Shown: in pieces, positions 209-64,000 of the stretch
How the letters are laid out: the number at the start of each line of letters is the position of its first letter
How positions within the stretch are numbered: the stretch's first letter is position 1
Position numbers and translations under genes: made by a program
Source: Auanema rhodensis
Lineage: Eukaryota; Animalia; Nematoda
Length of the DNA: 64,000 bases
Assembly (NCBI GenBank): GCA_964057225.1
Contig: OZ059894.1
Location: 9,672,001-9,736,000 of the forward strand
Direction: 5' to 3'
Notes under the pieces: model-generated
What the model saw: the letters and a program-made list of their open reading frames with translations, nothing else
Told to the model about the DNA's origin: nothing
The model's database searches: none

Positions 209-336
209 CTTTTTGTTTTTGAGCCAACGAATTTCTGGTGTTGGTTCTCCTTGGATTTCTGCTGATAACTTGATCTTTTTTCCTTTAATACAGATTGTGT
301 CTAATGGAGCATTAGTTATTGATGGTTTAATAGCAG
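209..336 (-). CDS. ttn-1: Exon, Ig N-half (last exon in window; gene continues below position 1)
   Basis: [22 protein letters not shown]; AAG|GTATGT donor at 208. Confidence 0.88.
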
Positions 337-15300: not shown

Positions 15301-16121
15301 GAAAGATGAACAATGAATAGATAAAGAGAAAAACAGATAGATTGTTAAACATGCAACATGCACAAGACAAGAAAACAGATATTGACGACACATATTTCTT
15401 TGTAAAAATAAAGAAATTCATGACAATATATCCACATATATACTATATATTATACATAAATACATATAGTAGAACGATTGTCACGAGCTCACTTACCCTC
15501 AGATATCAATCGCAACATTAAGTAAACAAACATACCGTCCTCAATATTGATTTCAATCTCAGATACCCCATCATCTGAAGAAGAAATTAATATAACTGTC
15601 TAATAGAAACATGGCAAAATAATGTTTTTTTCTCCAAATTTCAAGATGATGATGACGCAAAATAGAAAACAAGAATAGTCAAGATTGTTTCGCAATAAGA
15701 ACGAACAGAAAGGAAAGAAGAAACGATTTCATGACAAGTATTGCGAGAAAGCAAGAATGTTGAAACTTGAAATATGAAGCTTTTTGGAACAAAATTTTAA
15801 TTTTTTTCACATATTTTAAAGTCTTGACGATATTGTACAAGCTAAAAGTGTTCACGATGATATTGACAAGTGCTTGAACGGTTTTTTTCTCAGCAAAGGG
15901 ACATGAACAAAGGTGAGTTTACAGCACACATGTGCTTCAAGAGAGGTTAAAAATTAAAAAAGAAAAGCAAAAAAAGCATGAGAATAATACAAATTTTTAA
16001 ATAATGAACCTATTTTTGGATAAAAGAACTATGATTTTTCAAAGTAGTCAATGGAGAAAAAAAGTGTGAATGAGAAAAAGAGAGTAAGAAGGATGGAGAG
16101 AGAAAGAGAGAGAGGGAAAGA

Positions 16122-16153
<32 letters not shown>

Positions 16154-22100: not shown

Positions 22101-25100
22101 GCAGTCTTGCGCTCTACGATATACTCGAGTGGTTCCTCGTCGCCTTCTGGAGGCGATGTCCATTTAATCTCGGCTGTCGTAGCAGACAGATGAATCAGCT
22201 GAATGTATCGAGGAGCTAACGGTGTATCAACCATTTTCAAGGCATAGCTAGCTTCATCTTCTCCAAATTGGTTAACCAGATGAACTCTAAGCTCGCCTTC
22301 ATCATCTTTTTTCATTTTGCGAATACGGAATGAAACATGATCTTCATATTGTTCCATATCCAAATCAGTAACAGGCTCTCTGTTCAAAGTAATACGAATG
22401 AGTGGTGCAGGGAAAGCTGTGAAGAATAGCTTTCTTTCGAAACTGCTTCCAGCTTTATGATAGACAAGTTTTGTAGACCTGAAACAAACTCAATTTCAAT
22501 CAGATTACTAATGCAATAACTCACTTCTCTTGAATAGTTGGTGGAATATCAGCAGAAATGCGAGCTGGAGAGCTACCAATGTCATCATCAATAACAACAT
22601 GGTAAACTCCGATATAGAAATTAGAAAATTGAACTAATTGAAGTGTTGTAACATTGTTTTCAATTTGAATGTTGATGAAATCGTTTGATAGAACAATCAT
22701 ACCATTCTTGAACCATTTAGCGTTTCTTATTCTCTTACTTGCTACACATCGAAGTTCAATAACTTGGTAAAGATCTGATAAAGCAATAGCTTTTGGATGT
22801 TCAATGATCTGTTGTGGTGTTCCATCATCTGTATTCATAAAATAAGTTTGCATCAGACTTATTGAATATCTTACCTTCAAGAATATCTTCTGTACTTACT
22901 ATATCTTGCTCATCTACATCTTCATCCTTCTTCAATGATTTTCCGATAGTTAATTGAACTGACATCTTAGTTTCAGTTATTGTAATGAATTCTTCTTCGT
23001 TGGTATTTATAAGTATTTTTCTTTCATCCACATTTCTTGATATATTAGCACTGGCGCTTGAGATCATGACTGTAGTTGAAGCTTCCTGAATAGCAGACAT
23101 TCATACTAGAATTTTAATAAAAAATTTCTTTATTACCTGAGATGAGAATTCTTCGGGGAATGCTTCAATACCGTCTTCTTCGGAGATAGAATCAAGTAGA
23201 ACATCAACTTCAATAGCACTTTCGGATGTGCTTTCAGAATCGCTGTATTCATCTTCATAAATCATTAACTCCGTTTCATCATAATCATAGAAATTCAAAT
23301 CAACAATAGCATCTGTGGTTGAAGATTCTTCTCCGGCTTCAATATCGACTTCAACTATCATGTCACTAGTTCCTATAAAAAGTTCACTTAACTATTCGAA
23401 TATATTGTAAAGATATCATATGAGATGAAATAAAAAATACCTGATATTGTACGTGTTCTAGATACGTTCACTTCAAGTGTGGAATCAGATTTGGCTGCAA
23501 GACCGAGAGTCATATCTACATCTTCAGTTGGGGATGTAACGATTATTTCAATTCTTTCCTTCTTCTGAGATTTTTTCTTCTTTAATTTACCCAACTTTTT
23601 CTTTTTCTTATCCTTCTCCTCAGTAATAACAGCAGCTTCAGTTGTATCTGTAATACCAGTCACTGAAAATAAACATATCAACTTATTATCCGCCTACAAA
23701 CAGTAAGCTTACTCTCCAATTCTTGTTCCGGACAACCATCTTCATCCTTGTTTTTTAACAAATCCCAAATTATTCCCACACCTATCTTTTGAGTACGTGG
23801 CTTGATCAGTGAGCATTCAAGTAAAATAGATTCTTCGGCACATTCCAAACAATCCAGCTTTTCAATCTCCAATAATGGAATAAAGCAAAGTTTTGAAACT
23901 TCAAGAGATTCTCCAGTAACAGAGAAAACAGAATTGATTTCACGAGAAATAACCGTTTTCTCAGCTTCAGCTTTCTGTTTCTTTTCGAGTTCAGCCTTCT
24001 TCTCAGTCTCAGCCTTCTTCTCAGCTTCAGCCTTCTGTTTCTTGTCGAATTCAGCCTTCTTCTCAGTCTCAGCCTTCTTCTCAGCTTCAGCCTTCTGTTT
24101 CTTGTCGAGTTCAGCCTTCTTCTCAGTCTCAGCCTTCTGTTTCTTTTCGAGTTCAGCCTTCTTCTCAGCTTCAGCCTTCTGTTTCTTTTCGAGTTCAGCC
24201 TTCTTCTCAGTCTCAGCCTTCTGTTTCTTTTCGAGTTCAGCCTTCTTCTCAGCTTCAGCCTTCTGTTTCTTCTCCAGTTCAGTCTTCTTCTCAGCGTCAG
24301 CCTTCTTCTCAGTCTCAGTCTTCTTCTCAACGTCAGCCTTCTGTTTCTTTTCGAGTTCAGCCTTCTTCTCAGCTTCAGCCTTTTTCTCAGCTTCAGCCTT
24401 CTGTTTCTTCTCCAGTTCAGTCTTCTTCTCAGTCTCAGTCTTCTTCTCAACGTCAGCCTTCTGTTTCTTTTCGAGTTCAGCCTTCTTCTCAGCTTCAGCC
24501 TTCTGTTTCTTCTCCAGTTCAGTCTTCTTCTCAGCGTCAGCCTTCTTCTCAGTCTCAGTCTTTTTCTCAACGTCAGCCTTCTGTTTCTTTTCGAGTTCAG
24601 CCTTCTTCTCAGCTTCAGCCTTATTCTCAGCTTCAGCCTTCTGTTTCTTCTCGAGTTCAGCCTTCTTCTCAGCTTCAACCTTCTGTTTCTTCTCGAGTTC
24701 AGTCTTCTTCTCAGAGTCAGCCTTCTGTTTCTTCTCGAGTTCAGCCTTCTTTTCAGCCTCAGCCTTCTTCTCAGCTTCAGCCTTCGGTTTCTTCTGGAGT
24801 TCAGTCTTCTTCTCAGCTTCAGCCTTCTGTTTCTTCTCAAGTTCACTCTTCTTCTCAGCTTCAGCCTTCTGTTTCTTCTCGTCTTCATTCTTCTTCTCAG
24901 CTTCAGCCTTCTGTTTCTTCTCGAGTTCTGTCTTCTTCTCAGCTTCAGACTTCTGTTTCTTTTCGAGTTCAGTCTTCTTCTCAGCGTCAGCCTTCTGTTT
25001 CTTCTCGAGTTCAGCCTTCTTTTCAGTCTCAGCCTTCTTCTCAGCTTCAGCCTTCTGTTTCTTCTCGAGTTCAGCCTTCTTCTCAGCTTCAGACTTCTGT

Positions 25101-49100: not shown

Positions 49101-52100
49101 GCAGGAATCTCCTCTTGCTTCTCAGTTACCTGAGGTTGAGGTTCCTTTGGTGGTTCAGCAGATTCCTTTGGTTGAGCTTCTTCAATCTTCTGTGCAGGAA
49201 TATCCTCTGGCTTTTCAGTTGCCTGAGGTTGGGGTTCCTTTGATGGTTCAGCAGATTGCTTTGGTTGAGCTTCTTCAATCTTCTGTGCCGGAGTCTCCGC
49301 TGGCTTCTCAGTTGCCTGAGGTTGAGGTTCCTTTGATGGTTCAGCAGATTCCTGTGGTTGAGCTTCGTCTGTCTTCTGTGCAGGAATCTCCTCTTGCTTC
49401 TCAGTTACCTGAGGTTGAGGTTCCTTTGGTGGTTCAGCAGATTGCTTTGGTTGAGCTTCGTCAATTTTCTGTGCAGGAGTCTCCGCTGGCTTTTCAGTTG
49501 CCTGATGTTGGGGTTCCTTTGATGGTTCAGCAGATTGCTTTGGTTGAGGTTCTTCAATCTTCTGTGCAGGAATATCCTCTGGCTTTTCAGTTGCCTGAGG
49601 TTGGGGTTCCTTTGATGGTTCAGCAGATTCCTTTGGTTGAGCCTCGTCAGTCTTCTGTGCAGGAGTCTCCGCTGGCTTCTCAGCTACCAGAGGTTGTGGT
49701 TCCTTTGATGGTTCAGCAGATTCCTTTGGTTGAGCTTCGTCAGTCTTCTGTGCAGGAATCTCCGCTGGATTTTCAGCTAAAAGAGGTTGAGGTTCCATTG
49801 ATGGTTCAGCAGATTCATTTGGTTGAGCCTCATCAGTCTTCTGTGCAGGAGTCTCCGCTTGCTTTTCAGTTGCCTGAGGTTGAGGTTTCTTTGATGGTTC
49901 AGCAGATTCCTTTGGTTGAGCCTCATCAGTCTTCTGTGCAGGAGTCTCCGCTGGCTTCTCAGCTACCAGAGGTTGAGGTTCCTTTGATGGTTGATGAGAC
50001 TCCGTTGGTTGAGCCTCGTCACTCTTCTGTGCAGGAGTCTCCGTTGGCTTTTCAGTTGCCTGAGGTTGGGGTTCCTTTGATGGTTCAGCAGATTCCTTTG
50101 GTTGAGCCTCGTCACTCTTCTGTGCAGGAGTCTCCGTTGGCTTTTCAGTTGCCTGAGGTTGAGGTTCCTTTGATGGTTCAGCAGATTGCTTTGTTTGAGC
50201 TTCGTCAATCTTCTGTGCAGGAATCTCCTCTGGCTTTTCAGTTGCCTGAGCTTCAGGTTCATTTGATGGTTCATGAGACTCCTTTGGTTGAGCTTCGTCA
50301 GTCTTCTGTGCAGGAGTCTTCGCTGGCTTTTCAGTTGCCTGAAGTTGAGGTTCTTTTGATGGCTCAGCAGATTCCTTTGGTTGAGCCTCGTCAGTCTTCT
50401 GTGCAGAAGTCTCCGCTGGCTTCTCAGCTACGAGAAGTTGAGGTTCGTTTGGTTGAGCTTCTTCAATCTTCTGTGCAGGAATTTCCTCTGGCTTTTCAAT
50501 TGCCTGAGGTTGAGGTTCCTTTGATGGTTCTGCAGAATCCTTTTGTTGAGTTTCGTTCGTCTTCTGTGCAGAAGTCTCCGCTGGCTTCTCAGCTACGAGA
50601 AGTTGAGGTTCGTTTGGTTGAGCTTCTTCAATCTTCTGTGCAGGAATTTCCTCTGGCTTTTCAATTGCCTGAGGTTGAGGTTCCTTTGATGGTTCTGCAG
50701 AATCCTTTTGTTGAGTTTCGTTCGTCTTCTGTGCAGAAGTCTCCGCTGGCTTCTCAGCTACCAGAGGTTGAGGTTCCTTTGATGGTTGATGAGACTCCGT
50801 TGGTTGAGCCTCGTCACTCTTCTGTGCAGGAGTCTCCGTTGGCTTTTCAGTTGCCTGAGGTTGAGGTTCCTTTGATGGTTCAGCAGATTGCTTTGTTTGA
50901 GCTTCGTCAATCTTCTGTGCAGGAATCTCCTCTGGCTTTTCAGTTGCCTGAGCTTCAGGTTCATTTGATGGTTCATGAGACTCCTTTGGTTGAGCTTCGT
51001 CAGTCTTCTGTGCAGGAATTTCCTCTGGCTTTTCAGTTGCCTGAAGTTGAGGTTCTTTTGATGGCTCAGCAGATTCCTTTGGTTGAGCCTCGTCAGTCTT
51101 CTGTGCAGAAGTCTCCGCTGGCTTCTCAGCTACGAGAAGTTGAGGTTCGTTTGGTTGAGCTTCTTCAATCTTCTGTGCAGGAATTTCCTCTGGTTTTTCA
51201 ATTGCCTGAGCTTCAGGTTCTTTTGATGGTTCATGAGACTCCTTTGGTTGAGCTTCTTCAATCTTCTGTGCAGGAATCTCCTTTTGCTTCTCAGTTAGCT
51301 GAGGTTGAGGTTCCTTTGGTGGTTCCGCAGATTCCTTTGGTTGAGCATCGTCAGTCTTCTGTGCAGCAGTCTCCGCTGGCTTTTCAGTTGCCTGAGGTTG
51401 AGGTTCCTTTGATGGTTCAGCAGAATCCTTTGGTTGAGTTTCGTTCGTCTTCTGTGCAGGAGTCTCCGCTGGCTTTTCAGTTGCCTGAAGTTGAGGTTCC
51501 TTTGATGGCTCAGCAGATTCCGTTGGTTGAGCCTCGTCAGTCTTCTGTGCAGGAGTCTCCGCTGGCTTCTCAGTTACCTGAGGTTGAGGTTCCTTTGGTG
51601 GTTCCGCAGATTCCTTTGGTTGAGCTTCTTCAATCTTCTGTGCAGGAATCTCCTCTTGCTTCTCAGTTACCTGAGGTTGAGGTTCCTTTGGTGGTTCCGC
51701 AGATTCCTTTGGTTGAGCTTCTTTAGTCTTCTGTGCAGGAGTCTCCTCTGGCTTTTCAGTTACCTGAGGTTGAGGTTCCTTTGATGGTTCAGCAGATTCC
51801 GTTGGTTGAGCCTCGTCAGTCTTCTGTGCAGGAGTCTCCGCTGGCTTCTCAGCTACCCGAGGTTGAGGTTCCTTTGATGGTTCAGCAGATTCCTTTAGTT
51901 GAGTTTCGTCTGTCTTCTGAACAGGCATCTCAACGGGCTTTTCAGTTGCCTGAGGTTGAGGTTCCTTTGATGGTTCAGCAGATTCCTTTGGTTGAGCTTC
52001 TTTAGTCTTCTGTGCAGGAGTCTCCTCTGGCTTTTCAGCTACCAGAGGATGAGGTTCCTTTGATTGTTCAGCAGAATCCTTTGGTTGAGCTTCTTCAATC

Positions 52101-55100
52101 TTCTGCGCAGGAATCTCCTCTTGCTTCTCAGTTACCTGAGGTTGAGGTTCCTTTGATGGTTCAGCAGAATCCTTTGGTTGAGCTTCTTCAATCTTCTGCG
52201 CAGGAATCTCCTCTTGCTTCTCAGTTACCTGAGGTTGAGGTTCCTTTGGTGGTTCCGCAGACTCCTTTGGTTGAGCCTCGTCAGTCTTCTGCGCAGGAAT
52301 CTCCTCTTGCTTCTCAGTTACCTGAGGTTGAGGTTCCTTTGGTGGTTCCGCAGAATCCTTTGGTTGAGCTTCGTCAGTCTTCTGTGCAGGAATCTCCTCT
52401 TGCTTCTCAGTTACCTGAGGTTGAGGTTCCTTTGATGGTTCAGCAGATTCCTTTGGTTGAGCTTCTTCAATCTTCTGCGCAGGAATCTCCTCTTGCTTCT
52501 CAGTTACCTGAGGTTGAGGTTCCTTTGGTGGTTCCGCAGATTCCTTTGGTTGAGCTTCTTCAATCTTCTGTGCAGGAATCTCCTCTTGCTTCTCAGTTAC
52601 CTGAGGTTGAGGTTCCTTTGGTGGTTCCGCAAATTCCTTTGGTTGAGCTTCCTCAATCTTCTGTGCAGGAATCTCCTCTTGCTTCTCAGTTACCTGAGGT
52701 TGAGGTTCCTTTGATGGTTCAGCAGATTCCGTTGGTTGAGCCTCGTCAGTCTTCTGTGCAGGAGTCTCCGCTGGCTTCTCAGCTACCCGAGGTTGAGGTT
52801 CCTTTGATGGTTCAGCAGATTCCTTTAGTTGAGTTTCGTCTGTCTTCTGAACAGGCATCTCAACGGGCTTTTCAGTTGCCTGAGGTTGAGGTTCCTTTGG
52901 TGGTTCCGCAAATTCCTTTGGTTGAGCTTCCTCAATCTTCTGTGCAGGAATCTCCTCTTGCTTCTCAGTTACCTGAGGTTGAGGTTCCTTTGATGGTTCA
53001 GCAGATTCCGTTGGTTGAGCCTCGTCAGTCTTCTGTGCAGGAGTCTCCGCTGGCTTCTCAGCTACCCGAGGTTGAGGTTCCTTTGATGGTTCAGCAGATT
53101 CCTTTAGTTGAGTTTCGTCTGTCTTCTGAACAGGCATCTCAACGGGCTTTTCAGTTACCAGAAGTTCAGGTTTCTCTGATGGTTCAGTAGATTTCTGTTG
53201 ATCTGTTCGATATTCAACTCTACTTTGACTCTTCAACCCAAGCTGTTCGAAAACATCAAGAACAAGATCAATTTCCAAACCACAACACTCGTCTTCTTTG
53301 AAAAATTCCAGACTCAGCTGAGCTTCAGGTTCATTTGATGGTTCATGAGACTCCTTTGGTTGAGCCTCGTCAGTCTTCTGCGCAGGAATCTCCTCTTGCT
53401 TCTCAGTTACCCGAGGTTGAGGTTCCTTTGGTGGTTCCGCAGAATCCTTTGGTTGAGCTTCGTCAGTCTTCTGTGCAGGAATCTCCTCTTGCTTCTCAGT
53501 TACCTGAGGTTGAGGTTCCTTTGATGGTTCAGCAGATTCCTTTGGTTGAGCTTCTTCAATCTTCAGCGCAGGAATCTCCTCTTGCTTCTCAGTTACCTGA
53601 GGTTGAGGTTCCTTTGGTGGTTCCGCAGATTCCATTGGTTGAGCTTCCTCAATCTTCTGTGCAGGAATCTCCTCTTGCTTCTCAGTTACCTGAGGTTGAG
53701 GTTCCTTTGATGGTTCAGCAGATTCCGTTGGTTGACCCTCGTCAGTCTTCTGTGCAGGAGTCTCCGCTGGCTTCTCAGCTACCAGAGGTTGAGGTTCCTT
53801 TGATGGTTCAGCAGATTCCTTTAGTTGAGTTTCGTCTGTCTTCTGAACAGGCATCTCAACGGGCTTTTCAGTTGCCTGAGGTTGAGGTTCCTTTGATGGT
53901 TCAGCAGATTCCTTTGGTTGAGCTTCTTCAGTCTTCTGTGCAGGAGTCTCCTCTGGCTTTTCAGTTACCAGAAGTTCAGGTTTCTCCGATGGTTCAGCAG
54001 ATTCCTTTAGTTGAGTTTCGTCTGTCTTCTGAACAGGCATCTCAACGGGCTTTTCAGTTGCCTGAGGTTGAGGTTCCTTTGATGGTTCAGCAGATTCCTT
54101 TGGTTGAGCTTCCTCAATCTTCTGTGCAGGAATCTCCTCTTGCTTCTCAGTTACCTGAGGTTGAGGTTCCTTTGATGGTTCAGCAGATTCCGTTGGTTGA
54201 CCCTCGTCAGTCTTCTGTGCAGGAGTCTCCTCTGGCTTTTCAGTTACCAGAAGTTCAGGTTTCTCCGATGGTTCAGCAGATTCCTTTAGTTGAGTTTCGT
54301 CTGTCTTCTGTGCAGGAATCTCCTCTTGCTTCTCAGTTACCTGAGGTTGAGGTTCCTTTGATGGTTCAGCAGATTCCGTTGGTTGACCCTCGTCAGTCTT
54401 CTGTGCAGGAGTCTCCGCTGGCTTCTCAGCTACCAGAGGTTGAGGTTCCTTTGATGGTTCAGCAGATTCCTTTAGTTGAGTTTCGTCTGTCTTCTGAACA
54501 GGCATCTCAACGGGCTTTTCAGTTGCCTGAGGTTGAGGTTCCTTTGATGGTTCAGCAGATTCCTTTGGTTGAGCTTCTTCAGTCTTCTGTGCAGGAGTCT
54601 CCTCTGGCTTTTCAGTTACCAGAAGTTCAGGTTTCTCCGATGGTTCAGCAGATTCCTTTAGTTGAGTTTCGTCTGTCTTCTGAACAGGCATCTCAACGGG
54701 CTTCTCAGTTACCAGAAGTTCAGGTTTCTCCGATGGTTCAGCAGATTCCTTTAGTTGAGTTTCGTCTGTCTTCTGTGCAGGAATCTCCTCTTGCTTCTCA
54801 GTTACCTGAGGTTGAGGTTCCTTTGATGGTTCAGCAGATTCCGTTGTTTGACCCTCGTCAGTCTTCTGTGCAGGAGTCTCCGCTGGCTTCTCAGCTACCA
54901 GAGGTTGAGGTTCCTTTGATGGTTCAGCAGATTCCTTTAGTTGAGTTTCGTCTGTCTTCTGAACAGGCATCTCAACAGTAGATTTCTGTTGATGTGTTCG
55001 ATCTTCAACTCTACTTTGACTCTTCAACCCAAGCTGTTCGAAAACATCAAGAACAAGATCAATTTCCAAACCACAACACTCGTCTTCTTTGAAAAATTCC

Positions 55101-58100
55101 AGACTCAGCTGAGCTTCAGGTTCATTTGATGGTTCATGAGACTCCTTTGGTTGAGCCTCGTCAGTCTTCTGCGCAGGAATCTCCTCTTGCTTCTCAGTTA
55201 CCTGAGGTTGAGGTTCCTTTGGTGGTTCCGCAGATTCCTTTGGTTGAGCTTCTTCAATCTTCTGTGCAGGAATCTCCTCTTGCTTCTCAGTTACCTGAGG
55301 TTGAGGTTCCTTTGGTGGTTCCGCAGAATCCTTTGGTTGAGCTTCGTCAGTCTTCTGTGCAGGAATCTCTTCTTGCTTCTCAGTTACCTGAGGTTCAGGT
55401 TCCTTTGATGGTTCAGCAGATTCCTTTGGTTGAGCTTCTTCAATCTTCTGCGCAGGAATCTCCTCTTGCTTCTCAGTTACTTGAGGTTGAGGTTCCTTTG
55501 GTGGTTCCGCAGATTCCTTTGGTTGAGCTTTGGCAGTCTTCTGTGCAGGAATCTCTTCTTGCTTCTCAGCTACCAGAGGTTGAGGTTCCTTTGGTTGAGC
55601 TTCTTCAATCTTCTGCGCAGGAATCTCCTCTTGCTTCTCAGTTACCTGAGGTTGAGGTTCCTTTGATGGTTCAGCAGATTCCTTTGGTTGAGCTTTGGCA
55701 GTCTTCTGTGCAGGAATCTCTTCTTGCTTCTCAGCTACCAGAGGTTGAGGTTCCTTTGGTTGAGCTTCTTCAATCTTGTGTGCAGGAGTCTCCGCTGGCT
55801 TTTCAGTTGCCTGAGATTGAGGTTCGTTTGATGGTTCAGCAGATTCCTTTGGTTGAGCTTTGTCAGTCTTCTGAACAGGCATCTCAGCGGGCTTCTCAGC
55901 TACCAGAGGTTGAGGTTCCTTTGGTTGAGCTTCTTTAGTCTTCTGTGCAGGAGTCTCCTCTGGCTTTTCAGCTACCAGAGAATGAGGTTCCTTTGATTGT
56001 TCAGCAGATTTCTGTTGATCTGTTCGATCTTCAGCTCTACTTTGACTCTTCAACCCAAGCTGTTCGAAAACATCAAGAACAAGATCAATTTCCAAACCAC
56101 AACACTCGTCTTCTTTGAAAAATTCCAGACTCAGCTGAGCTTCAGGTTCATTTGATGGTTCATGAGACTCCTTTGGTTGAGCTTCGTCAGTCTTCTGTGC
56201 AGGAGTCTCCTCTGCCTTTTCAGTTGACTGTGGTTGAGGTTCCTTTGATGGTTCAGCAGAATCCTTTGGTTGAGCTTCGTCAGTCTTCTGTGCAGGAATC
56301 TCCGCTGGCTTCTCAGTTACCTGAGGTTGAAGTTCCTTCGATGGTTCAACAGAATCCTTTGGTTGAGCTTTGTCAGTCTTCTGTGCAGGAGTCTCCTCTG
56401 CCTTTTCAGTTGACTGTGGTTGAGGTTCCTTTGATGGTTCAGCAGAATCCTTTGGTTGAGCTTCGTCAGTCTTCTGTGCAGGAGTCTCCTCTGGCTTTTC
56501 AGTTGCCTGTGGTTGAGGTTCCTTTGATGGTTCAGCAGAATCCTTTGGTTGAGCTTCTTCAGTCTTCTGTGCAGGAGTCTCCTCTGGTTTTTCAGTTGCC
56601 TGTGGTTGAGGTTCCTTTGATGGTTCAGCAGAATCCTTTGGTTGAGCTTCGTCAGTCTTCTGTGCAGGAGTCTCCTCTGCCTTCTCAGTTACCTGAGGTT
56701 GAGGTTCCTTTGATGGTTCAGCAGATTCCTTTGGTTGAGTTTTGTCAGTCTTCTGAACAGGCATTTCAGCGGGCTTCTCAGTTGCCTGAGGTTGAGGTTC
56801 CTTTGATGGTTCAGCAGATTCCTTTGGTTGAGTTTTGTCAGTCTTCTGTGCAGGAGTCTCCTCTGCCTTTTCAGTTGACTGTGGTTGAGGTTCCTTTGAT
56901 GGTTCAGCAGAATCCTTTGGTTGAGCTTCGTCAGTCTTCTGTGCAGGAGTCTCCTCTGCCTTTTCAGTTGACTGTGGTTGAGGTTCCTTTGATGGTTCAG
57001 CAGATTCCTTTGGTTGAGGTTCTTCGGTCTTCTGTACAAGAATCTCCGCTCGCTTCTCAGTTACCTGAGGTTGAGGTTCCTTTGATGGTTCAGCCGATTC
57101 ATTTGGTTGAGCTTCGTCAGTCTTCTGTGCAGGAGTCTCCGCTGGCTTTTCAGCTAAAAGAGGTTGAGGTTCCTTTGATGGTTCCGCAGATTTCTGTTCA
57201 TCTGTTCGATCTTCAGGTCTACTTTGACTCTTCAACCCAAGCTGTTCGAAAACATCAAGAACAAGATCAATTTCCAAACCACAACACTCCTCTTCTTTGA
57301 AAAATTCCAGACTCAGCTGAGCTTCAGGTTCATTTGATTGTTCAGCAGATTCCTTTGGTTGAGCTTCGTCAGTCTTCTGTGCAGGAGTCTCAACTAGCTC
57401 TTTAGTTGCCTGAGGTTGAGGTTCCTTCGATGGCTCAGCAGATTCCTTTGGTTGATCTTCGTCAGTCTTCTGTGCAGGAGTCTCCACTGGCTTTTCAGTT
57501 GCCTGAGGTTGAGGTTCCTTTGATGGTTCCGCAGATTTCTGTTCATCTGTTCGATCTTCAGCTCTACTTTGACTCTTCAACCCAAGCTGTTCGAAAACAT
57601 CAAGAACAAGATCAATTTCCAAACCACAACACTCCTCTTCTTTGAACAATTCAAGATTAAGCTGAGTTTCCTGTTCCTTTGATGGTTCAGCAGAATCGTT
57701 TGGTTGAGCTTCGGCAGTCTTCTGTGCAAGAGCCTCCGCTGGCTTCTCAGTTGACTGTGGTTGAGGTTCCTTTGATGGCTCAGCAGATTCCTTTGGTTGA
57801 GCTTCTTCAATTTTCTGTGCAGGAATCTCTTCTGGCTTTTCAGCTACCAGAGGTTGAAGTTCCTTTGAAGGTTCAGCAGAATCTTTTGGTTGAGGTTCTT
57901 CGGTCTTCTGTACAAGAATCTCCGCTGGCTTCTCAGTTACCTGAGTTTCCTGTTCCTTTGATGGCTCAGCAGATTCCTTTGGTTGAGCTTCGTCAGTCTT
58001 CTGTGCAGGAGTCTCCTCTGGCTTTTCAGTTGACTGTGGTTGAGGTTCCTTTGATGGTTCAGCAGAATCCTTTGGTTGAGCTTCTTCAGTCTTCTGTGCA

Positions 58101-61100
58101 GGAGTCTCCTCTGGCTTTTCAGTTGCCTGAGGTTGAGGTTCCTTTGAAGGTTCAGCAGAATCTTTTGGTTGAGGTTCTTCGGTCTTCTGTACAAGAATCT
58201 CCGCTGGCTTCTCAGTTACCTGAGTTTCCTGTTCCTTTGATGGCTCAGCAGATTCCTTTGGTTGAGCTTCGTCAGTCTTCTGTGCAGGAGTCTCCACTGG
58301 CGTTTCAGTTGCCTGAGGTTGAGGTTCCTTTGATGGTTCAGCAGTTTCCTTTGGTTGAGCTTCGTCAGTCTTCTGTGCAGGAGTCTCAACTAGCTCTTTA
58401 GTTGCCTGAGGTTGAGGTTCCTTCGATGGCTCAGCAGATTCCTTTGGTTGATCTTCGTCAGTCTTCTGTGCAGGAGTCTCCACTGGCTTTTCAGTTGCCT
58501 GAGGTTGAGGTTCCTTTGATGGTTCAGCAGATTCCTTTGGTTGATCTTCGTCAGTCTTTTGTGCAGGAGTCTCCTCTGGCTTTTCAGTTGACTGTGGTTG
58601 AGGTTCCTTTGATGGTTCAGCAGAATCCTTTGGTTGAGCTTCTTCAGTCTTCAGTGCAAGAGTCACCTGTGGCTTTTCAGTTGCCTGAGGTTGAAGTTCC
58701 TTTGATGGTTCAGCAGATTCCTTTGGTTGAGCTTCGTCAGTCTTCTGTGCAGGAGTCTCCTCTGGCTTTTCAGTTGCCTGAGGTTGAAGTTCTTTTGCTG
58801 GTTCAGCAGAATCCTTTGGTTGAGCTTCGTCAGTCTTCTGTGCAGGAGTCTCCTCTGGCTTTTCAGTTACCTGAGGTTGAAGTTCCTTTGCTGGTTCAGC
58901 AGAATCCTTCGGTTGAGCTTCGTCAGTCTTCTGTGCAGGAGTTTCCTCTGGCTTTTCAGTTGCTCGAGGTTGAGGTTCCTTTGATGGTTCAGCAGATTCC
59001 TTTGGTTGAGCTTCGTCAGTCTTCTGTGCAGGAATCTCTTCTGGCTTTTCAGCTACCAGAGGTTGAAGTTCCTTTGAAGGTTCAGCAGAATCTTTTGGTT
59101 GAGGTTCTTCGGTCTTCTTTACAAGAATCTCCGCTGGCTTCTCATTTGCCTCAGGTTGAGGTTCCTTTGATGGTTCCGCAGATTTCTGTTCATCTGTTCG
59201 ATCTTCAGCTCTACTTTGACTCTTCAACCCAAGCTGTTCGAAAACATCAAGAACAAGATCAATTTCCAAACCACAACACTCCTCTTCTTTGAACAATTCA
59301 AGATTAAGCTGAGTTTCCTGTTCCTTTGATGGCTCAGCAGATTCCTTTGGTTGAGCTTCGTCAGTCTTCTGTGCAGGAGTCTCCTCTGGCTTTTCAGTTA
59401 CCTGAGTTTCCTGTTCCTTTGATGGCTCAGCAGATTCCTTTGGTTGAGCTTCGTCAGTCTTCTGTGCAGGAGTCTCCACTGGCGTTTCAGTTGCCTGAGG
59501 TTGAGGTTCCTTTGATGGTTCAGCAGTTTCCTTTGGTTGAGCTTCGTCAGTATTCTGTACAAGAGTCACCTGTGGCTTTTCAGTTGCCTGAGGTTGAAGT
59601 TCCTTTGCTGGTTCAGCAGAATCCTTCGGTTGAGCTTCGTCAGTCTTCTGTGCAGGAGTCTCCTCTGGCTTTTCAGTTGCCTGAGGTTGAGGTTCCTTTG
59701 ATGGTTCAGCAGATTCCTTTGGTTGATCTTCGTCAGTCTTTTGTGCAGGAGTCTCCTCTGGCTTTTCAGTTGACTGTGGTTGAGGTTCCTTTGATGGTTC
59801 AGCAGAATCCTTTGGTTGAGCTTCTTCAGTCTTCAGTGCAAGAGTCACCTGTGGCTTTTCAGTTGCCTGAGGTTGAAGTTCCTTTGATGGTTCAGCAGAT
59901 TCCTTTGGTTGAGCTTCGTCAGTCTTCTGTGCAGGAGTCTCCTCTGGCTTTTCAGTTGCCTGAGGTTGAGGTTCCTTTGATGGTTCAGCAGATTCCTTTG
60001 GTTGAGCTTCGTCAGTCTTCTGTGCAGAAATCTCCTCTGGCTTTTCAGTTACCTGAGGTTGAAGTTCCTTTGCTGGTTCAGCAGAATCCTTCGGTTGAGC
60101 TTCGTCAGTCTTCTGTGCAGGAGTTTCCTCTGGCTTTTCAGTTGCTCGAGGTTGAGGTTCCTTTGATGGTTCAGCAGATTCCTTTGGTTGAGCTTCGTCA
60201 GTCTTCTGTGCAGGAATCTCTTCTGGCTTTTCAGCTACCAGAGGTTGAAGTTCCTTTGAAGGTTCAGCAGAATCTTTTGGTTGAGGTTCTTCGGTCTTCT
60301 GTACAAGAATCTCCGCTGGCTTCTCATTTGCCTCAGGTTGAGGTTCCTTTGATGGTTCCGCAGATTTCTGTTCATCTGTTCGATCTTCAGCTCTACTTTG
60401 ACTCTTCAACCCAAGCTGTTCGAAAACATCAAGAACAAGATCAATTTCCAAACCACAACACTCCTCTTCTTTGAACAATTCAAGATTAAGCTGAGTTTCC
60501 TGTTCCTTTGATGGCTCAGCAGATTCCTTTGGTTGAGCTTCGTCAGTCTTCTGTGCAGGAGTCTCCTCTGGCTTTTCAGTTGACTGTGGTTGAGGTTCCT
60601 TTGATGGTTCAGCAGAATCCTTTGGTTGAGCTTCGTCAGTCTTCTGTGCAGGAGTCTCCACTGGCTTTTCAGTTGCCTGAGGTTGAGGTTCCTTTGATGG
60701 TTCAGCAGATTCCTTTGGTTGAGCTTCGTCAGTATTCTGTACAAGAGTCACCTGTGGCTTTTCAGTTGCCTGAGGTTGAAGTTCCTTTGCTGGTTCAGCA
60801 GAATCCTTCGGTTGAGCTTCGTCAGTCTTCTGTGCAGGAGTCTCCTCTGGCTTTTCAGTTGCCTGAGGTTGAGGTTCCTTTGATGGTTCAGCAGATTCCT
60901 TTGGTTGATCTTCGTCAGTCTTTTGTGCAGGAGTCTCCTCTGGCTTTTCAGTTGACTGTGGTTGAGGTTCCTTTGATGGTTCAGCAGAATCCTTTGGTTG
61001 AGCTTCTTCAGTCTTCAGTGCAAGAGTCACCTGTGGCTTTTCAGTTGCCTGAGGTTGAAGTTCCTTTGATTGTTCTGCAGAATCCTTTGGTTGAGCTTCG

Positions 61101-64000
61101 TCAGTCTTCTGTGCAGGAGTCTCCTCTGGCTTTTCAGTTGCTCGAGGTTGAGGTTCCTTTGATGGTTCAGCAGATTCCTTTGGTTGAGCTTCGTCAGTCT
61201 TCTGTGCAGAAATCTCTTCTGGCTTTTCAGTTGCCTCAGGTTGAGGTTCCTTTGATGGTTCCGCAGATTTCTGTTCATCTGTTCGATCTTCAGCTCTACT
61301 TTGACTCTTCAACCCAAGCTGTTCGAAAACATCAAGAACAAGATCAATTTGCAAACCACAACACTCCTCTTCTTTGAAAAATTCCAGACTCAGCTGAGCT
61401 TCAGGTTCATTTGATGGTTCATGAGACTCCTCTGGTTGAGCTTCGTCAGTCTTCCGTGCAGGAATCTCCTCTGGCTTCTCAGTTGCCTGAGGTTGAAGTT
61501 CCTTTGATTGTTCTGCAGAATTCTTTGGTTGAGCTTCGTCAGTCTTCTGTGCAGGAGTCTCCTCTGGCTTTTCAGTTGCTCGAGGTTGAGGTTCCTTTGA
61601 TGGTTCAGCAGATTCCTTTGGTTGAGCTTCGTCAGTCTTCTGTGCAGGAATCTCTTCAGGCTTTTCAGCTACCAGAGGTTGAAGTTCCTTTGAAGGTTCA
61701 GCAGAATCTTTTGGTTGAGGTTCTTCGGTCTTCTGTACAAGAATCTCCGCTGGCTTCTCAGTTGCCTCAGGTTGAGGTTCCTTTGATGGTTCCGCAGATT
61801 TCTGTTCATCTGTTCGATCTTCAGCTCTACTTTGACTCTTCAACCCAAGCTGTTCGAAAACATCAAGAACAAGATCAATTTGCAAACCACAACACTCCTC
61901 TTCTTTGAACAATTCAAGATTAAGCTGAGTTTCCTGTTCCTTTGATGGCTCAGCAGATTGATTTTGTTGAGCTTCGTCAGTCTTCTGTGCAGGAGTCTCC
62001 TCTGGCTTTTCAGTTGACTGTGGTTGAGGTTCCTTTGATGGTTCAGCAGAATCCTTTGGTTGAGCTTCTTCAGTCTTCTGTGCAGGAGTCTCCTCTGGCT
62101 TTTCAGTTGCCTGAGGTTGAGGTTCCTTTGAAGGTTCAGCAGAATCTTTTGGTTGAGGTTCTTCGGTCTTCTGTACAAGAATCTCTGCTGGCTTCTCAGT
62201 TACCTGAGTTTCCTGTTCCTTTGATGGCTCAGCAGATTCCTTTGGTTGAGCTTCTTCAGTCTTCTGTGCAGGAGTCTCCTCTGGCTTTTCAGTTGACTGT
62301 GGTTGAGGTTCCTTTGATGGTTCAGCAGAATCCTTTGGTTGAGCTTCTTCAGTCTTCAGTGCAAGAGTCACCTGTGGCTTTTCAGTTGCCTGAGGTTGAA
62401 GTTCCTTTGATGGTTCAGCAGATTCCTTTGGTTGAGCTTCGTCAGTCTTCTGTGCAGGAGTCTCCTCTGGCTTTTCAGCTACCAGAGGTTGAAGTTCCTT
62501 TGAAGGTTCAGCAGAATCTTTTGGTTGAGGTTCTTCGGTCTTCTGTACAAGAATCTCCGCTGGCTTCTCAGTTACCTGAGTTTCCTGTTCCTTTGATGGC
62601 TCAGCAGATTCCTTTGGTTGAGCTTCGTCAGTCTTCTGTGCAGGAGTCTCCTCTGGCTTTTCAGTTGACTGTGGTTGAGGTTCCTTTGATGGTTCAGCAG
62701 AATCCTTTGGTTGAGCTTCTTCAGTCTTCTGTGCAGGAGTCTCCTCTGGCTTTTCAGTTGCCTGAGGTTGAGGTTCCTTTGAAGGTTCAGCAGAATCTTT
62801 TGGTTGAGGTTCTTTGGTCTTCTGTACAAGAATCTCTGCTGGCTTCTCAGTTACCTGAGTTTCCTGTTCCTTTGATGGCTCAGCAGATTCCTTTGGTTGA
62901 GCTTCGTCAGTCTTCTGTGCAGGAGTCTCCTCTGGCTTTTCAGTTGACTGTGGTTGAGGTTCCTTTGATGGTTCAGCAGAATCCTTTGGTTGAGCTTCTT
63001 CAGTCTTCAGTGCAAGAGTCACCTGTGGCTTTTCAGTTGCCTGAGGTTGAAGTTCCTTTGATGGTTCAGCAGATTCCTTTGGTTGAGCTTCGTCAGTCTT
63101 CTGTGCAGGAGTCTCCTCTGGCTTTTCAGCTACCAGAGGTTGAAGTTCCTTTGAAGGTTCAGCAGAATCTTTTGGTTGAGGTTCTTCGGTCTTCTGTACA
63201 AGAATCTCCGCTGGCTTCTCAGTTACCTGAGTTTCCTGTTCCTTTGATGGCTCAGCAGATTCCTTTGGTTGAGCTTCGTCAGTCTTCTGTGCAGGAGTCT
63301 CCTCTGGCTTTTCAGTTGACTGTGGTTGAGGTTCCTTTGATGGTTCAGCAGAATCCTTTGGTTGAGCTTCTTCAGTCTTCTGTGCAGGAGTCTCCTCTGG
63401 CTTTTCAGTTGCCTGAGGTTGAGGTTCCTTTGAAGATTCAGCAGAATCTTTTGGTTGAGGTTCTTTGGTCTTCTGTACAAGAATCTCTGCTGGCTTCTCA
63501 GTTACCTGAGTTTCCTGTTCCTTTGATGGCTCAGCAGATTCCTTTGGTTGAGCTTCGTCAGTCTTCTGTGCAGGAGTCTCCTCTGGCTTTTCAGTTGACT
63601 GTGGTTGAGGTTCCTTTGATGGTTCAGCAGAATCCTTTGGTTGAGCTTCTTCAGTCTTCTGTGCAGGAGTCTCCTCTGGCTTTTCAGTTGCCTGAGGTTG
63701 AGGTTCCTTTGAAGGTTCAGCAGAATCTTTTGGTTGAGGTTCTTCGGTCTTCAGTGCAAGAGTCACCTGTGGCTTTTCAGTTGCCTGAGGTTGAGGTTCC
63801 TTTGATGGTTCAGCAGAATCCTTTGGTTGAGCTTCGGCAGTCTTCTGTGCAAGAGTCTCCGCTGGCTTCTCAGTTGACTGTGGTTGAGGTTCCTTTGATG
63901 GTTCAGCAGAATCCTTTGGTTGAGCTTCGTCAGTCTTCTGTGCAGGAGTCTCCGCTGGCTTTTCAGTTGCATGTGGTTGAGGTTCCTTTGATGGTTCAGC
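209..64000 (-). CDS. ttn-1: Giant titin-like muscle protein gene (nematode TTN-1-like), internal fragment; 35 exons, about 19,787 codons in window, partial at both ends
   Basis: I-set Ig and Fn3 domains interleaved with huge charged/proline-rich tandem repeats. All 34 inter-exon introns are GT-AG with matching phases. Segments '[19 protein letters not shown]' and '[24 protein letters not shown]' resemble C. elegans TTN-1 as I recall it (confirm by BLASTP). Confidence 0.88.
384..561 (-). CDS. ttn-1: Exon, Fn3 C-half
   Basis: [23 protein letters not shown]. Confidence 0.88.
607..731 (-). CDS. ttn-1: Exon, Fn3 N-half
   Basis: [20 protein letters not shown]...SYIVEMKE. Confidence 0.88.
791..901 (-). 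CDS. ttn-1: Exon, Fn3 C-half
   Basis: [23 protein letters not shown]. Confidence 0.9.
954..1136 (-). CDS. ttn-1: Exon, Fn3 N-half
   Basis: [12 protein letters not shown]...SCKLNWKPP...[14 protein letters not shown]. Confidence 0.9.
1185..1332 (-). CDS. ttn-1: Exon, Ig C-half
   Basis: [23 protein letters not shown]. Confidence 0.9.
1587..1717 (-). CDS. ttn-1: Exon, Ig N-half
   Basis: [27 protein letters not shown]. Confidence 0.9.
1766..2131 (-). CDS. ttn-1: Exon, linker + Ig
   Basis: FTWTKN...[14 protein letters not shown]; TTTTCAG / GTGATT junctions. Confidence 0.88.
2180..3487 (-). CDS. ttn-1: Exon, Ig-Ig-Fn3-Fn3 + linker
   Basis: ORF 1743..3347 extended to the TTTTCAG acceptor at 3488; GTAAGA donor at 2179. 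Confidence 0.9.
3534..3809 (-). CDS. ttn-1: Exon, Ig
   Basis: FELSCTLS...IWYKDG...DKGNYRC. Confidence 0.9.
3858..3987 (-). CDS. ttn-1: Exon, Ig C-half
   Basis: [23 protein letters not shown]. Confidence 0.9.
4039..4196 (-). CDS. ttn-1: Exon, Ig N-half
   Basis: [21 protein letters not shown]. Confidence 0.9.
4245..4377 (-). CDS. ttn-1: Exon, Fn3 C-half
   Basis: [24 protein letters not shown]. Confidence 0.9.
4421..4720 (-). CDS. ttn-1: Exon, Fn3 C-half + Fn3 N-half
   Basis: [10 protein letters not shown]...VTMEWDP; TTTCAG / GTTAGT junctions. Confidence 0.9.
4763..4933 (-). CDS. ttn-1: Exon, Fn3 N-half
   Basis: [24 protein letters not shown]; TTTAG / GTATAC junctions. Confidence 0.9.
5027..5304 (-). 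CDS. ttn-1: Exon, Fn3
   Basis: DVPDAP...WKPPTNNGG...[12 protein letters not shown]. Confidence 0.92.
5490..11327 (-). CDS. ttn-1: Large exon (5,838 nt, phase 1-1): AEPKK array, unique insert, AEKK array, linker, three Ig domains
   Basis: ORF 5467..11163 extended to the TTTTCAG acceptor at 11328; AAG|GTATGT donor at 5489. Confidence 0.9.
7264..9315 (-). repeat. Second [14 protein letters not shown] coding array
   Basis: Same units as 23956-42166. Confidence 0.93.
9878..11120 (-). repeat. Coding array of AEAEPKK (21 nt) units plus six 36-nt [12 protein letters not shown] units
   Basis: gatttgatc recurs every 36 nt from about 9992 to 10172. Confidence 0.9.
11455..11611 (-). CDS. ttn-1: Exon, Ig C-half
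   Basis: [29 protein letters not shown]; AAG-type acceptor at 11612; AAG|GTGTGT donor at 11454. Confidence 0.8.
11656..11847 (-). CDS. ttn-1: Exon, Ig N-half
   Basis: [39 protein letters not shown]. Confidence 0.88.
11894..12021 (-). CDS. ttn-1: Exon, Arg/Lys-rich linker
   Basis: ATTCAG acceptor at 12022; GTCTGT donor at 11893; phases fit. Confidence 0.8.
12070..12192 (-). CDS. ttn-1: Exon, Ig end
   Basis: [24 protein letters not shown]; TTTTAG / GTAATA junctions. Confidence 0.88.
12238..12350 (-). CDS. ttn-1: Exon, Ig middle
   Basis: [19 protein letters not shown]; TTTCAG / GTAAAC junctions. Confidence 0.88.
12498..12603 (-). CDS. ttn-1: Exon, Ig start
   Basis: TTTAG acceptor at 12604; GTAAGT donor at 12497; [13 protein letters not shown]. 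Confidence 0.85.
12650..12842 (-). CDS. ttn-1: Exon, Ig C-half
   Basis: ...[24 protein letters not shown]; TTATAG / GTATGA junctions. Confidence 0.85.
12893..13011 (-). CDS. ttn-1: Exon, Ig N-half
   Basis: TTTCAG acceptor at 13012; GTAAGA donor at 12892; LQPCFEEP...[17 protein letters not shown]. Confidence 0.85.
13058..15136 (-). CDS. ttn-1: Exon, low-complexity S/E/K/T region with degenerate 30-35 aa repeats (2,079 nt, phase 1-1)
   Basis: ORF 12975..15179; TTTGCAG acceptor at 15137 gives the needed phase; AAG|GTTTGT donor at 13057. Confidence 0.8.
15171..15191 (-). CDS. Candidate 21-nt micro-exon EWLLSGT (phase 1-1)
   Basis: Perfect TTTTCAG acceptor at 15192 and GTATGT donor at 15170. 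Read-through from this acceptor hits a stop in all three frames. Confidence 0.4.
15350..15362 (-). promoter_or_regulatory. Tandem UGCAUG (RBFOX-family) intronic splicing elements
   Basis: Plus-strand CATGCA at 15350-15355 and 15357-15362 reads TGCATGTTGCATG on the pre-mRNA strand; function inferred. Confidence 0.5.
15536..15574 (-). CDS. ttn-1: 39-nt micro-exon [13 protein letters not shown] (phase 1-1), with an alternative in-frame donor at 15496
   Basis: CTTCAG acceptor at 15575; G|GTATGT donor at 15535; acidic peptide like its neighbours. Confidence 0.6.
16096..16192. repeat. Intronic (GA)n microsatellite with a ~12-nt GAAAGAGAGAGA sub-period
   Basis: Direct reading. Confidence 0.9.
16711..16723 (-). 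promoter_or_regulatory. Composite UGCAUG-C-GUGUG (RBFOX + SUP-12-like) element
   Basis: Reverse complement is TGCATGCGTGTGT, resembling the egl-15 UGCAUGGUGUG element. Confidence 0.45.
16720..17010. promoter_or_regulatory. GC/CpG-rich intronic patch with E-box CAGCTG (16756-16761) and AGACGCAGA (16945-16953); possible internal promoter or enhancer
   Basis: Composition contrasts with the AT-rich introns; motifs are seen directly, function is inferred. Confidence 0.3.
17502..18362 (-). CDS. ttn-1: Exon, Ig-Ig-Fn3 (861 nt, phase 1-1)
   Basis: ORF 17485..18411; TTTTAG acceptor at 18363; G|GTAAAG donor at 17501. Confidence 0.9.
18406..18522 (-). CDS. ttn-1: Exon, acidic linker [12 protein letters not shown]...ESGFSD (117 nt, phase 1-1)
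   Basis: TTTTCAG acceptor at 18523; GTTTTT donor at 18405; open in the required frame (not in the ORF track). Confidence 0.75.
18568..22478 (-). CDS. ttn-1: Exon, Ig + Fn3 + [12 protein letters not shown] repeat array (3,911 nt)
   Basis: TTTCAG acceptor at 22479; Fn3 motifs [17 protein letters not shown]; AAG|GTTGGT donor at 18567. Confidence 0.88.
18600..21690 (-). repeat. Coding array of AEAEPKKK (24 nt) and AEAEKK (18 nt) units
   Basis: Direct reading; includes a ~444-nt internal duplication. Confidence 0.93.
22525..22828 (-). CDS. ttn-1: Exon, Ig domain
   Basis: IELRC...AKWFKNG...GVYHV; ATACAG acceptor at 22829, GTGAGT donor at 22524. Confidence 0.85.
22875..23085 (-). CDS. ttn-1: Exon, acidic linker
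   Basis: ATTCAG acceptor at 23086; AAG|GTAAGA donor at 22874; phase 0 to 1. Confidence 0.75.
23137..23372 (-). CDS. ttn-1: Exon, acidic linker
   Basis: TTATAG acceptor at 23373; CAG|GTAATA donor at 23136; phase 1 to 0. Confidence 0.8.
23441..23662 (-). CDS. ttn-1: Exon, Lys-rich linker (222 nt, phase 1-1)
   Basis: TTTTCAG acceptor at 23663; G|GTATTT donor at 23440. Confidence 0.8.
23713..64000 (-). CDS. ttn-1: Giant repeat exon (at least 40,288 nt, at least 13,429 codons): 31-aa array + CC spacers + AEKK helical array; 5' end outside window
   Basis: ORF 23678..63766 continues in frame to the window edge ([10 protein letters not shown]... at 64000). Donor A|GTAAGC at 23712, phase 1. Confidence 0.85.
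23956..42166 (-). repeat. Coding tandem array of 18-nt (AEAEKK) and 24-nt (AELEKKQK) units, about 6,070 aa
   Basis: Direct reading; frequent 42-nt and 60-nt composite periods. Confidence 0.95.
42382..64000 (-). repeat. Coding tandem array, 93-nt / 31-aa unit (consensus about [31 protein letters not shown]), roughly 220 units, PEVK/PEVT-like
   Basis: Period read directly (e.g. ctgtgcagga at 42401 and 42494); unit count estimated from length. Confidence 0.95.
53189..61927 (-). repeat. Nine dispersed ~132-nt / 44-aa spacer motifs QL(N/S)LE(L/F)FKE(E/D)ECCGL(E/Q)[28 protein letters not shown]
   Basis: cacaacactc core seen near 53281, 55072, 56098, 57280, 57625, 59272, 60454, 61357, 61888. Confidence 0.95.

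What the first reader, a model, noticed from the sequence alone, without database searches (positions are those of the whole stretch)
23713..64000. A single coding exon of more than 40 kb
Seen: 40,288 nt with no stop, frameshift or AT-rich intron-like gap, still open at the window edge, while most introns in the gene are under 60 nt. All unit indels I saw are multiples of 3, and the other frames do contain stops, which argues for selection on this frame. Known: the largest human coding exons are about 17 kb (TTN) and about 22 kb (MUC16). The sense strand is purine-rich with few GT donors or U-rich acceptors, which would suppress cryptic splicing. Caveat: array length could be mis-assembled.
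Basis: partly seen in the sequence, partly recalled or inferred. Interest (0 to 1): 0.85.

Follow-up and report, generated by a model that had tools for sequence, protein, structure and literature searches.

The report
Giant spring exon in worm titin
A roundworm's muscle-spring (titin) gene seems to carry one unbroken coding piece of over 40,000 bases, built from short repeats; that is longer than any exon I found described, but of a known kind.

Summary
Confirmed as DNA. The minus strand is stop-free from 64000 to a donor at 23712 (40,288 nt, 13,429 codons). It belongs to a nematode TTN-1 (titin) gene whose other 33 in-window introns have a median of 48 nt. The exon holds two arrays: about 232 PEVK-like 31-aa units and 6,064 aa of A/E/K helix repeats. 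It is under coding selection (0 nonsense variants against about 16 expected). It shows no sign of inflated assembly: the longest exact duplicate is 1.09 kb, and an independent DNA run tiles the inter-array junction. The 3' end and donor phase are conserved in hookworm. Its codon pattern is that of coding DNA, but RNA depth was too low to decide. The acceptor lies outside the window; an unchecked note caps the exon near 46 kb. Likely mechanism: in-frame repeat expansion, tolerated because short introns are defined across themselves. Verdict: probable size record of a known kind (about 70%). The scan noted this stretch before, but not on other DNA.

The parts
23713..64000 (-). Giant coding exon of a TTN-1/titin gene, at least 40,288 nt (13,429 codons, about 1.5 MDa of protein); open at the window edge
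42383..64000 (-). Array 1: about 232 units of 93 nt / 31 aa, PEVK-like (E21 P16 Q13 K12 A11 %), net acidic; 112 of 167 full units distinct, 9-13% nt divergence
53193..61936 (-). Nine hydrophobic nodes with an [10 protein letters not shown]-type motif interrupting array 1 (GLEIDL at 61888, 61357, 60454, 59272, 57625, 57280, 56098, 55072, 53281)
42150..42383 (-). Unique AT-rich spacer between the arrays with two diverged GLEIDL copies; also the best cryptic in-frame intron candidate (42370-42149, 222 nt)
23960..42150 (-). Array 2: 6,064 aa of A/E/K repeats ([20 protein letters not shown]), 3 prolines, predicted continuous helix
35091..37224 (.). Only long exact duplicate in the exon (1,090 nt at offset 1,044): a recent duplication or a possible local assembly error
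23713..23960 (-). Unique 3' end of the exon; homologous to the array-ending segment in hookworm titin
23663..23712 (-). 50-nt phase-1 intron that ends the giant exon; same position and phase in Necator (69 nt)
209..23662 (-). 33 further exons of the same gene (Ig and Fn3 domains, two more K/E/A repeat exons of 3.9 and 5.8 kb); the gene continues past the left edge

Best explanation
This is the elastic-region exon of the nematode titin TTN-1. Two tandem arrays grew inside one ancestral exon by in-frame unequal exchange or slippage (inferred). Selection removed every stop and frameshift (shown). The exon is now 40.3 to about 46 kb. Splicing copes because the spliceosome pairs the splice sites across the 45-50-nt introns (intron definition), so exon length hardly matters while the A/G-rich repeats offer no good donor-acceptor pair (inferred). 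The protein segment is a two-part I-band spring: about 7,200 aa of disordered PEVK-like chain (about 2.5 micrometre contour) in series with about 6,060 aa of charged helix (about 0.9 micrometre if helical). That function is inferred by analogy to TTN-1 and Sallimus.
For: Stop-free frame. A 34-exon in-window model with 33 GT-AG introns gives 19,774 aa without a stop. Exons are collinear with nematode titins at 42-72% identity to C. japonica P0030. 0 nonsense variants against 9.4 + 6.7 expected; nonsyn/syn 0.29 in array 2. All repeats in one codon phase. Longest exact duplicate 1,090 nt, and every 1.2-kb window is unique. Independent DNA run X9 tiles the spacer and both junctions with 0 mismatches; its summed depth is never below what the assembly predicts. 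Spacer GLEIDL copies are conserved through synonymous changes, 5-6 per pairwise comparison of 18 codons. Both arrays appear in three probable RNA runs, and an X10 contig reads from array 2 through the strongest cryptic donor at 23953. Hookworm has a repeat array ending in the same segment with a phase-1 donor. AlphaFold: 31-aa units unstructured, A/E/K segment helical (single sequence, mean pLDDT 63).
Against: The acceptor was not seen. No RNA contig spans the spacer. The 42370-42149 candidate scores 12.0, inside the range of the gene's real introns. There is no long-read evidence. The 'RNA' label of X10-X12 is the tool's guess. The depth comparison is rough: the tool warns that summed depth is not a copy number.
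Confidence: 0.7

Rival explanations
1. Two exons, not one: the AT-rich spacer 42370-42149 is a 222-nt in-frame intron (always, or as a regulated exitron), giving exons of at least 21.6 kb and of 18.4 kb.
For: Best donor-acceptor pair in the exon, in frame, and covering the unique spacer almost exactly. Lowest GC of the exon. No RNA contig on it.
Against: The spacer is stop-free and keeps GLEIDL through third-position changes, matching the nine nodes in array 1. No joint was seen in RNA. The 2-3-copy stretch 42119-42148, exonic on either reading, is just as empty in RNA, so the hole reflects depth; implied single-copy RNA depth is about 0.1-3. The acceptor lacks the TTTCAG consensus.
Confidence: 0.13
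2. The exon is real as DNA, but mRNAs often shorten or skip it (weak in-frame sites inside the 93-nt array, or whole-exon skipping), as fly Sallimus does with its PEVK exons. The full 40-kb form would then be a minor isoform.
For: Weak in-frame pairs such as CAG|GTAACT recur in array 1 (score up to 9.9). Per-copy RNA signal falls from about 1.4-3.4 in array 2 to 0.1-1.2 in array 1. [quoted passage not shown] An unchecked scan note reports a length switch just upstream (s1-418507).
Against: Those pairs score below 29 of the 33 real introns. The fall in signal fits 3' bias on a transcript of over 60 kb. Whole-exon skipping would not undo the exon's size.
Confidence: 0.1
3. The arrays are mis-assembled and the true exon is much shorter than 40 kb.
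For: The sequence is 84-89% non-unique at 31-mers, and there is one exact 1,044-nt tandem duplicate. The assembly method is unknown.
Against: No exact duplicate exceeds 1.09 kb, and units diverge gradually with distance. There is no frameshift in 40 kb. X9 depth lies between the lower and upper predictions and is never below; for array 1 it is 2.5-5 times the lower one, which hints at under- rather than over-assembly.
Confidence: 0.07

Closest known systems
C. elegans TTN-1 and its nematode orthologs (C. japonica A0A8R1HRW0, Necator ETN72288.1, Nippostrongylus VDL74392.1 'Titin')
   Same: Same Ig/Fn3 order and K/E/A repeat blocks. TTN-1 is a 2-MDa I-band protein (PMC9886281). From memory, C. 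elegans TTN-1 has about 18,500 aa with PEVT/CEEEI, AAPLE, BLUE and DispRep repeats; I could not obtain that paper.
   Different: The in-window part alone is 19,774 aa (2.2 MDa) with both ends missing. The longest C. elegans exon is 15 kb (PMC3563967), against over 40 kb here. The repeat sequences have no detectable homologs.
Chironomus Balbiani-ring genes BR1/BR2, exon 4
   Same: An internal coding exon of about 35 kb in a gene with a repetitive core, constitutively spliced (PMC2654125, PMC3028071); the genome has many short introns, suggesting intron definition (PMC4192438).
   Different: Secreted proteins rather than a sarcomere protein, unrelated in sequence, and at least 5 kb shorter.
Drosophila Sallimus PEVK exons 31/32
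   Same: Large exons encoding the I-band spring; their length sets protein and sarcomere length (PMC12063666).
   Different: Exon 32 encodes about 1,700 aa against 13,400 here, and is alternatively spliced by muscle type.
Human TTN 17,106-bp exon; Drosophila 27.7-kb exon; spider AgSp1
   Same: Very long coding exons (PMC12198301; PMC3563967; bioRxiv 10.1101/492025).
   Different: All are shorter. AgSp1's 42.3-kb coding sequence is split into two similar-sized exons.

Membership tests
Nematode TTN-1 (I-band titin) | Giant protein of I-set Ig and Fn3 domains | tested here: met
   Pfam I-set/fn3 in six exons; 19,774-aa model
Nematode TTN-1 (I-band titin) | Collinear orthology to nematode titins rather than twitchin or UNC-89 | tested here: met
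   Exon-by-exon best hits run in order along C. japonica, Necator and Nippostrongylus titin models
Nematode TTN-1 (I-band titin) | Long tandem short-repeat, low-complexity regions between domain blocks | tested here: met
Nematode TTN-1 (I-band titin) | C-terminal protein kinase domain | tested here: inconclusive
   Would lie beyond the window's left edge; in orthologous loci L001 and L003 the next gene model carries a kinase
Nematode TTN-1 (I-band titin) | I-band localisation and elasticity in muscle | not testable with these tools
   needs antibodies or tags and mechanical tests
Giant repeat-built coding exon (Balbiani-ring type) | One open frame under coding selection | tested here: met
Giant repeat-built coding exon (Balbiani-ring type) | Defined donor at its 3' end | tested here: met
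Giant repeat-built coding exon (Balbiani-ring type) | Defined acceptor at its 5' end | not testable with these tools
   outside the window
Giant repeat-built coding exon (Balbiani-ring type) | No internal splicing in mRNA | tested here: inconclusive
Giant repeat-built coding exon (Balbiani-ring type) | Assembled length is the true length | tested here: inconclusive
   Favoured; no spanning reads

The most novel reading that the evidence does not exclude
This is the longest coding exon yet described in an intron-rich animal gene (40-46 kb). It is constitutively included and gives a compact-genome worm a titin of well over 2.2 MDa with a two-stage spring several micrometres long. Spring length would then evolve among nematodes by repeat expansion inside one conserved exon that draft assemblies have systematically broken.
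Probability: 0.45. Interest if true: 0.65.

Novelty: new variant of a known kind. Interest (0 to 1): 0.5.

Why it matters
It raises the observed ceiling for a spliced coding exon and offers a clean test of intron definition: a 50-nt intron next to a 40-kb exon. It shows why nematode titin models are truncated, since the hookworm scaffold and the C. japonica model both break at this exon. It also makes the titin-ruler question testable across worms: does I-band or sarcomere length track the length of this exon, as Sallimus PEVK length does in flies (PMC12063666)? It brings no new protein family or splicing mechanism.

Tried and rejected
Homolog searches with the spacer found nothing, either as a region of a 10,000-aa query or as a 120-aa query; these are length-limited and say nothing about longer or shorter kin. 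An Atlas search with a node gave no usable hit. The Pfam hit of the spacer to CrmD_SECRET (E 0.004, below cut-off) was rejected as chance. The donor at 23953, the strongest in the exon, is out of frame with the 23663 and 23648 acceptors, and RNA reads through it. 'Selection against splice motifs' was rejected as a separate claim: GTRAG 0 against 14 and TTYCAG/TTTTAG 2 against 41 in codon shuffles, but the units are copies of one ancestor, so the sample size is about one. The opposite-strand 17.9-kb ORF (23897-41818) is a by-product of the repeat composition. The Forbes 2010 TTN-1 paper was not held, so the repeat-class names rest on memory. The species was not identified.

Full report
Observation. 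A six-frame scan shows one minus-strand frame free of stops from 64000 to 23678. The sequence has a donor A|GTAAGC at 23712 and a TTTTCAG acceptor at 23663. The exon therefore ends at 23713 and is at least 40,288 nt long. Continuing downstream, 33 GT-AG introns (median 48 nt; 26 under 60 nt) give a 34-exon model of 19,774 aa without a stop, open at both window edges.

Identity. Exons searched one by one carry I-set Ig and Fn3 domains. The single-stretch best matches of the exon at 17502-18362 are nematode proteins at 46-48% identity. The downstream exons map in order along C. japonica, Necator and Nippostrongylus titin models, and in two orthologous loci a kinase-bearing model follows. The gene is a TTN-1 ortholog; C. 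elegans TTN-1 is a 2-MDa I-band protein (PMC9886281). The species was not established. The joined model was used only in scripts and was not searched.

Anatomy. From 64000 to 42383 lie about 232 units of 93 nt encoding a PEVK-like, net acidic 31-aa repeat, interrupted by nine hydrophobic nodes with a Cys-Cys pair and GLEIDL. A 234-nt unique spacer follows, then 6,064 aa of A/E/K repeats with three prolines, then about 250 unique nt before the donor. A single-sequence AlphaFold model across the junction gives no structure for the 31-aa units and a continuous helix for the A/E/K part (pLDDT 63, weak evidence).

Is the frame selected? I therefore counted distinct minor variants between repeat copies. 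There are 145 in array 1 and 122 in array 2, and none is a stop. At the type-matched missense rate 9.4 and 6.7 stops would be expected (Poisson probability of none in both, about 1e-7). The nonsyn/syn ratio is 0.81 in array 1 and 0.29 in array 2. All 4,527 repeated 24-mers occur in one codon phase. The whole stretch is maintained as coding.

Is the length real? An inflated assembly would show long exact copies. The longest is 1,090 nt (35091-37224), and no 1.2-kb window occurs twice. Units differ by 9-13%, rising with distance. DNA run X9, not flagged as a source of this DNA, tiles 42030-42414 with four contigs and no mismatch, at single-copy depth of about 440-460. Its summed depth over repeat bins lies between the prediction from the assembly's own unitigs and the upper bound where every 31-mer is a contig, and never below. 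This is rough, and the tool warns against reading depth as copy number, but it gives no sign of inflation.

Is it one exon? Splice-site matrices trained on the gene's own introns find one serious candidate: 42370-42149, 222 nt, in frame, score 12.0, within the real range. Against it, the spacer's two GLEIDL copies and the array-1 nodes keep their amino acids through third-position changes. Three probable RNA runs hold both arrays but show neither the spacer nor the spliced joint. The neighbouring low-copy stretch 42119-42148, exonic on either reading, is also empty, and the implied single-copy depth is about 0.1-3, so the test is inconclusive. One X10 contig runs from array 2 into 23931-23960 and beyond, through the strongest cryptic donor at 23953. 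The Necator scaffold starts in a K/E/V/P repeat array that ends in a homologous segment (43% identity over 30 aa) and a phase-1 donor before the homologous next exon, so the 3' boundary is ancient. The acceptor is outside the window. An unchecked note places splice sites 5.1-6.1 kb beyond the edge (s1-418507), which would cap the exon near 46 kb.

Mechanism. Shown: in-frame repeat structure, purifying selection, a conserved 3' boundary and very short downstream introns. Inferred: growth by unequal exchange or slippage; splicing by intron definition, as proposed for short-intron genomes (PMC4192438), which makes exon length nearly irrelevant; and a role as I-band spring. At 0.35 nm per residue array 1 has a contour of about 2.5 micrometres, and array 2 is about 0.9 micrometres if helical. 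In flies, deleting a 1,700-aa PEVK exon shortens Sallimus by 0.5 micrometres (PMC12063666). The shortage of GT is mostly a result of amino-acid composition and copying.

Comparison. Documented large exons are 17,106 bp in human TTN (PMC12198301), 15 kb in C. elegans and 27.7 kb in Drosophila (PMC3563967), and about 35 kb for Balbiani-ring exon 4 (PMC2654125, PMC3028071). Spider AgSp1 has 42.3 kb of coding sequence in two exons. I found nothing longer than this exon, but the paper library is incomplete, and intronless giant genes of protists and bacteria are a different case. The exon is thus a probable record by a modest margin, about 2.7 times the C. elegans maximum, and of a known kind.

Verdict. 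Observation confirmed; interpretation partly supported. One exon of 40-46 kb has a probability of about 0.7. Rivals: a spacer intron 0.13, frequent internal shortening 0.10, mis-assembly 0.07. New variant of a known kind; interest 0.5.

Noticed in passing
window:15171-15191 (-): Candidate 21-nt micro-exon (TTTTCAG acceptor, GTATGT donor) only 34 nt from the acceptor at 15137 of the 2,079-nt exon. Both lengths are multiples of 3, so the two could be mutually exclusive (also noted as s1-410038; sequence seen).
   Followed up: partly
window:15137-17501 (-): The only long intron of the gene in this window (2,365 nt), with a GA/CT dinucleotide run near 16072-16192; a possible internal promoter or regulatory region.
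   Followed up: no
window:53193-61936 (-): Nine nodes with a Cys-Cys pair and a GLEIDL motif; the same motif without cysteines occurs twice in the spacer. They may correspond to the CEEEI repeats of C. elegans TTN-1 (from memory, untested).
   Followed up: partly
L003:1-760: The Necator scaffold begins inside the orthologous repeat array. Its frame shifts a few codons into the next exon, probably a draft sequencing error, which explains where the annotated model starts.
   Followed up: partly
window:23897-41818 (+): 17.9-kb stop-free frame on the opposite strand, and 10-kb open stretches in other frames, caused by the A/E/K repeat; a trap for ORF callers.
   Followed up: yes
window:5490-11327 and 18568-22478 (-): Two further large repeat exons (5.8 and 3.9 kb) with related K/E/A/P repeats, at the same places as the K/E/A blocks of C. 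japonica titin.
   Followed up: partly
window:42374-42480: Summed depth of DNA run X9 over the 93-nt unit is 2.5-5 times the lower prediction, whereas the strongest array-2 bins fit at about 1.0-1.15 (others up to about 2-3). Array 1 could be longer in that sample, or its contigs more fragmented.
   Followed up: partly
whole window: An earlier scan note (s1-419245) points to Auanema as the genus; closest database hits here were strongylids at 46-48%. Not verified.
   Followed up: no
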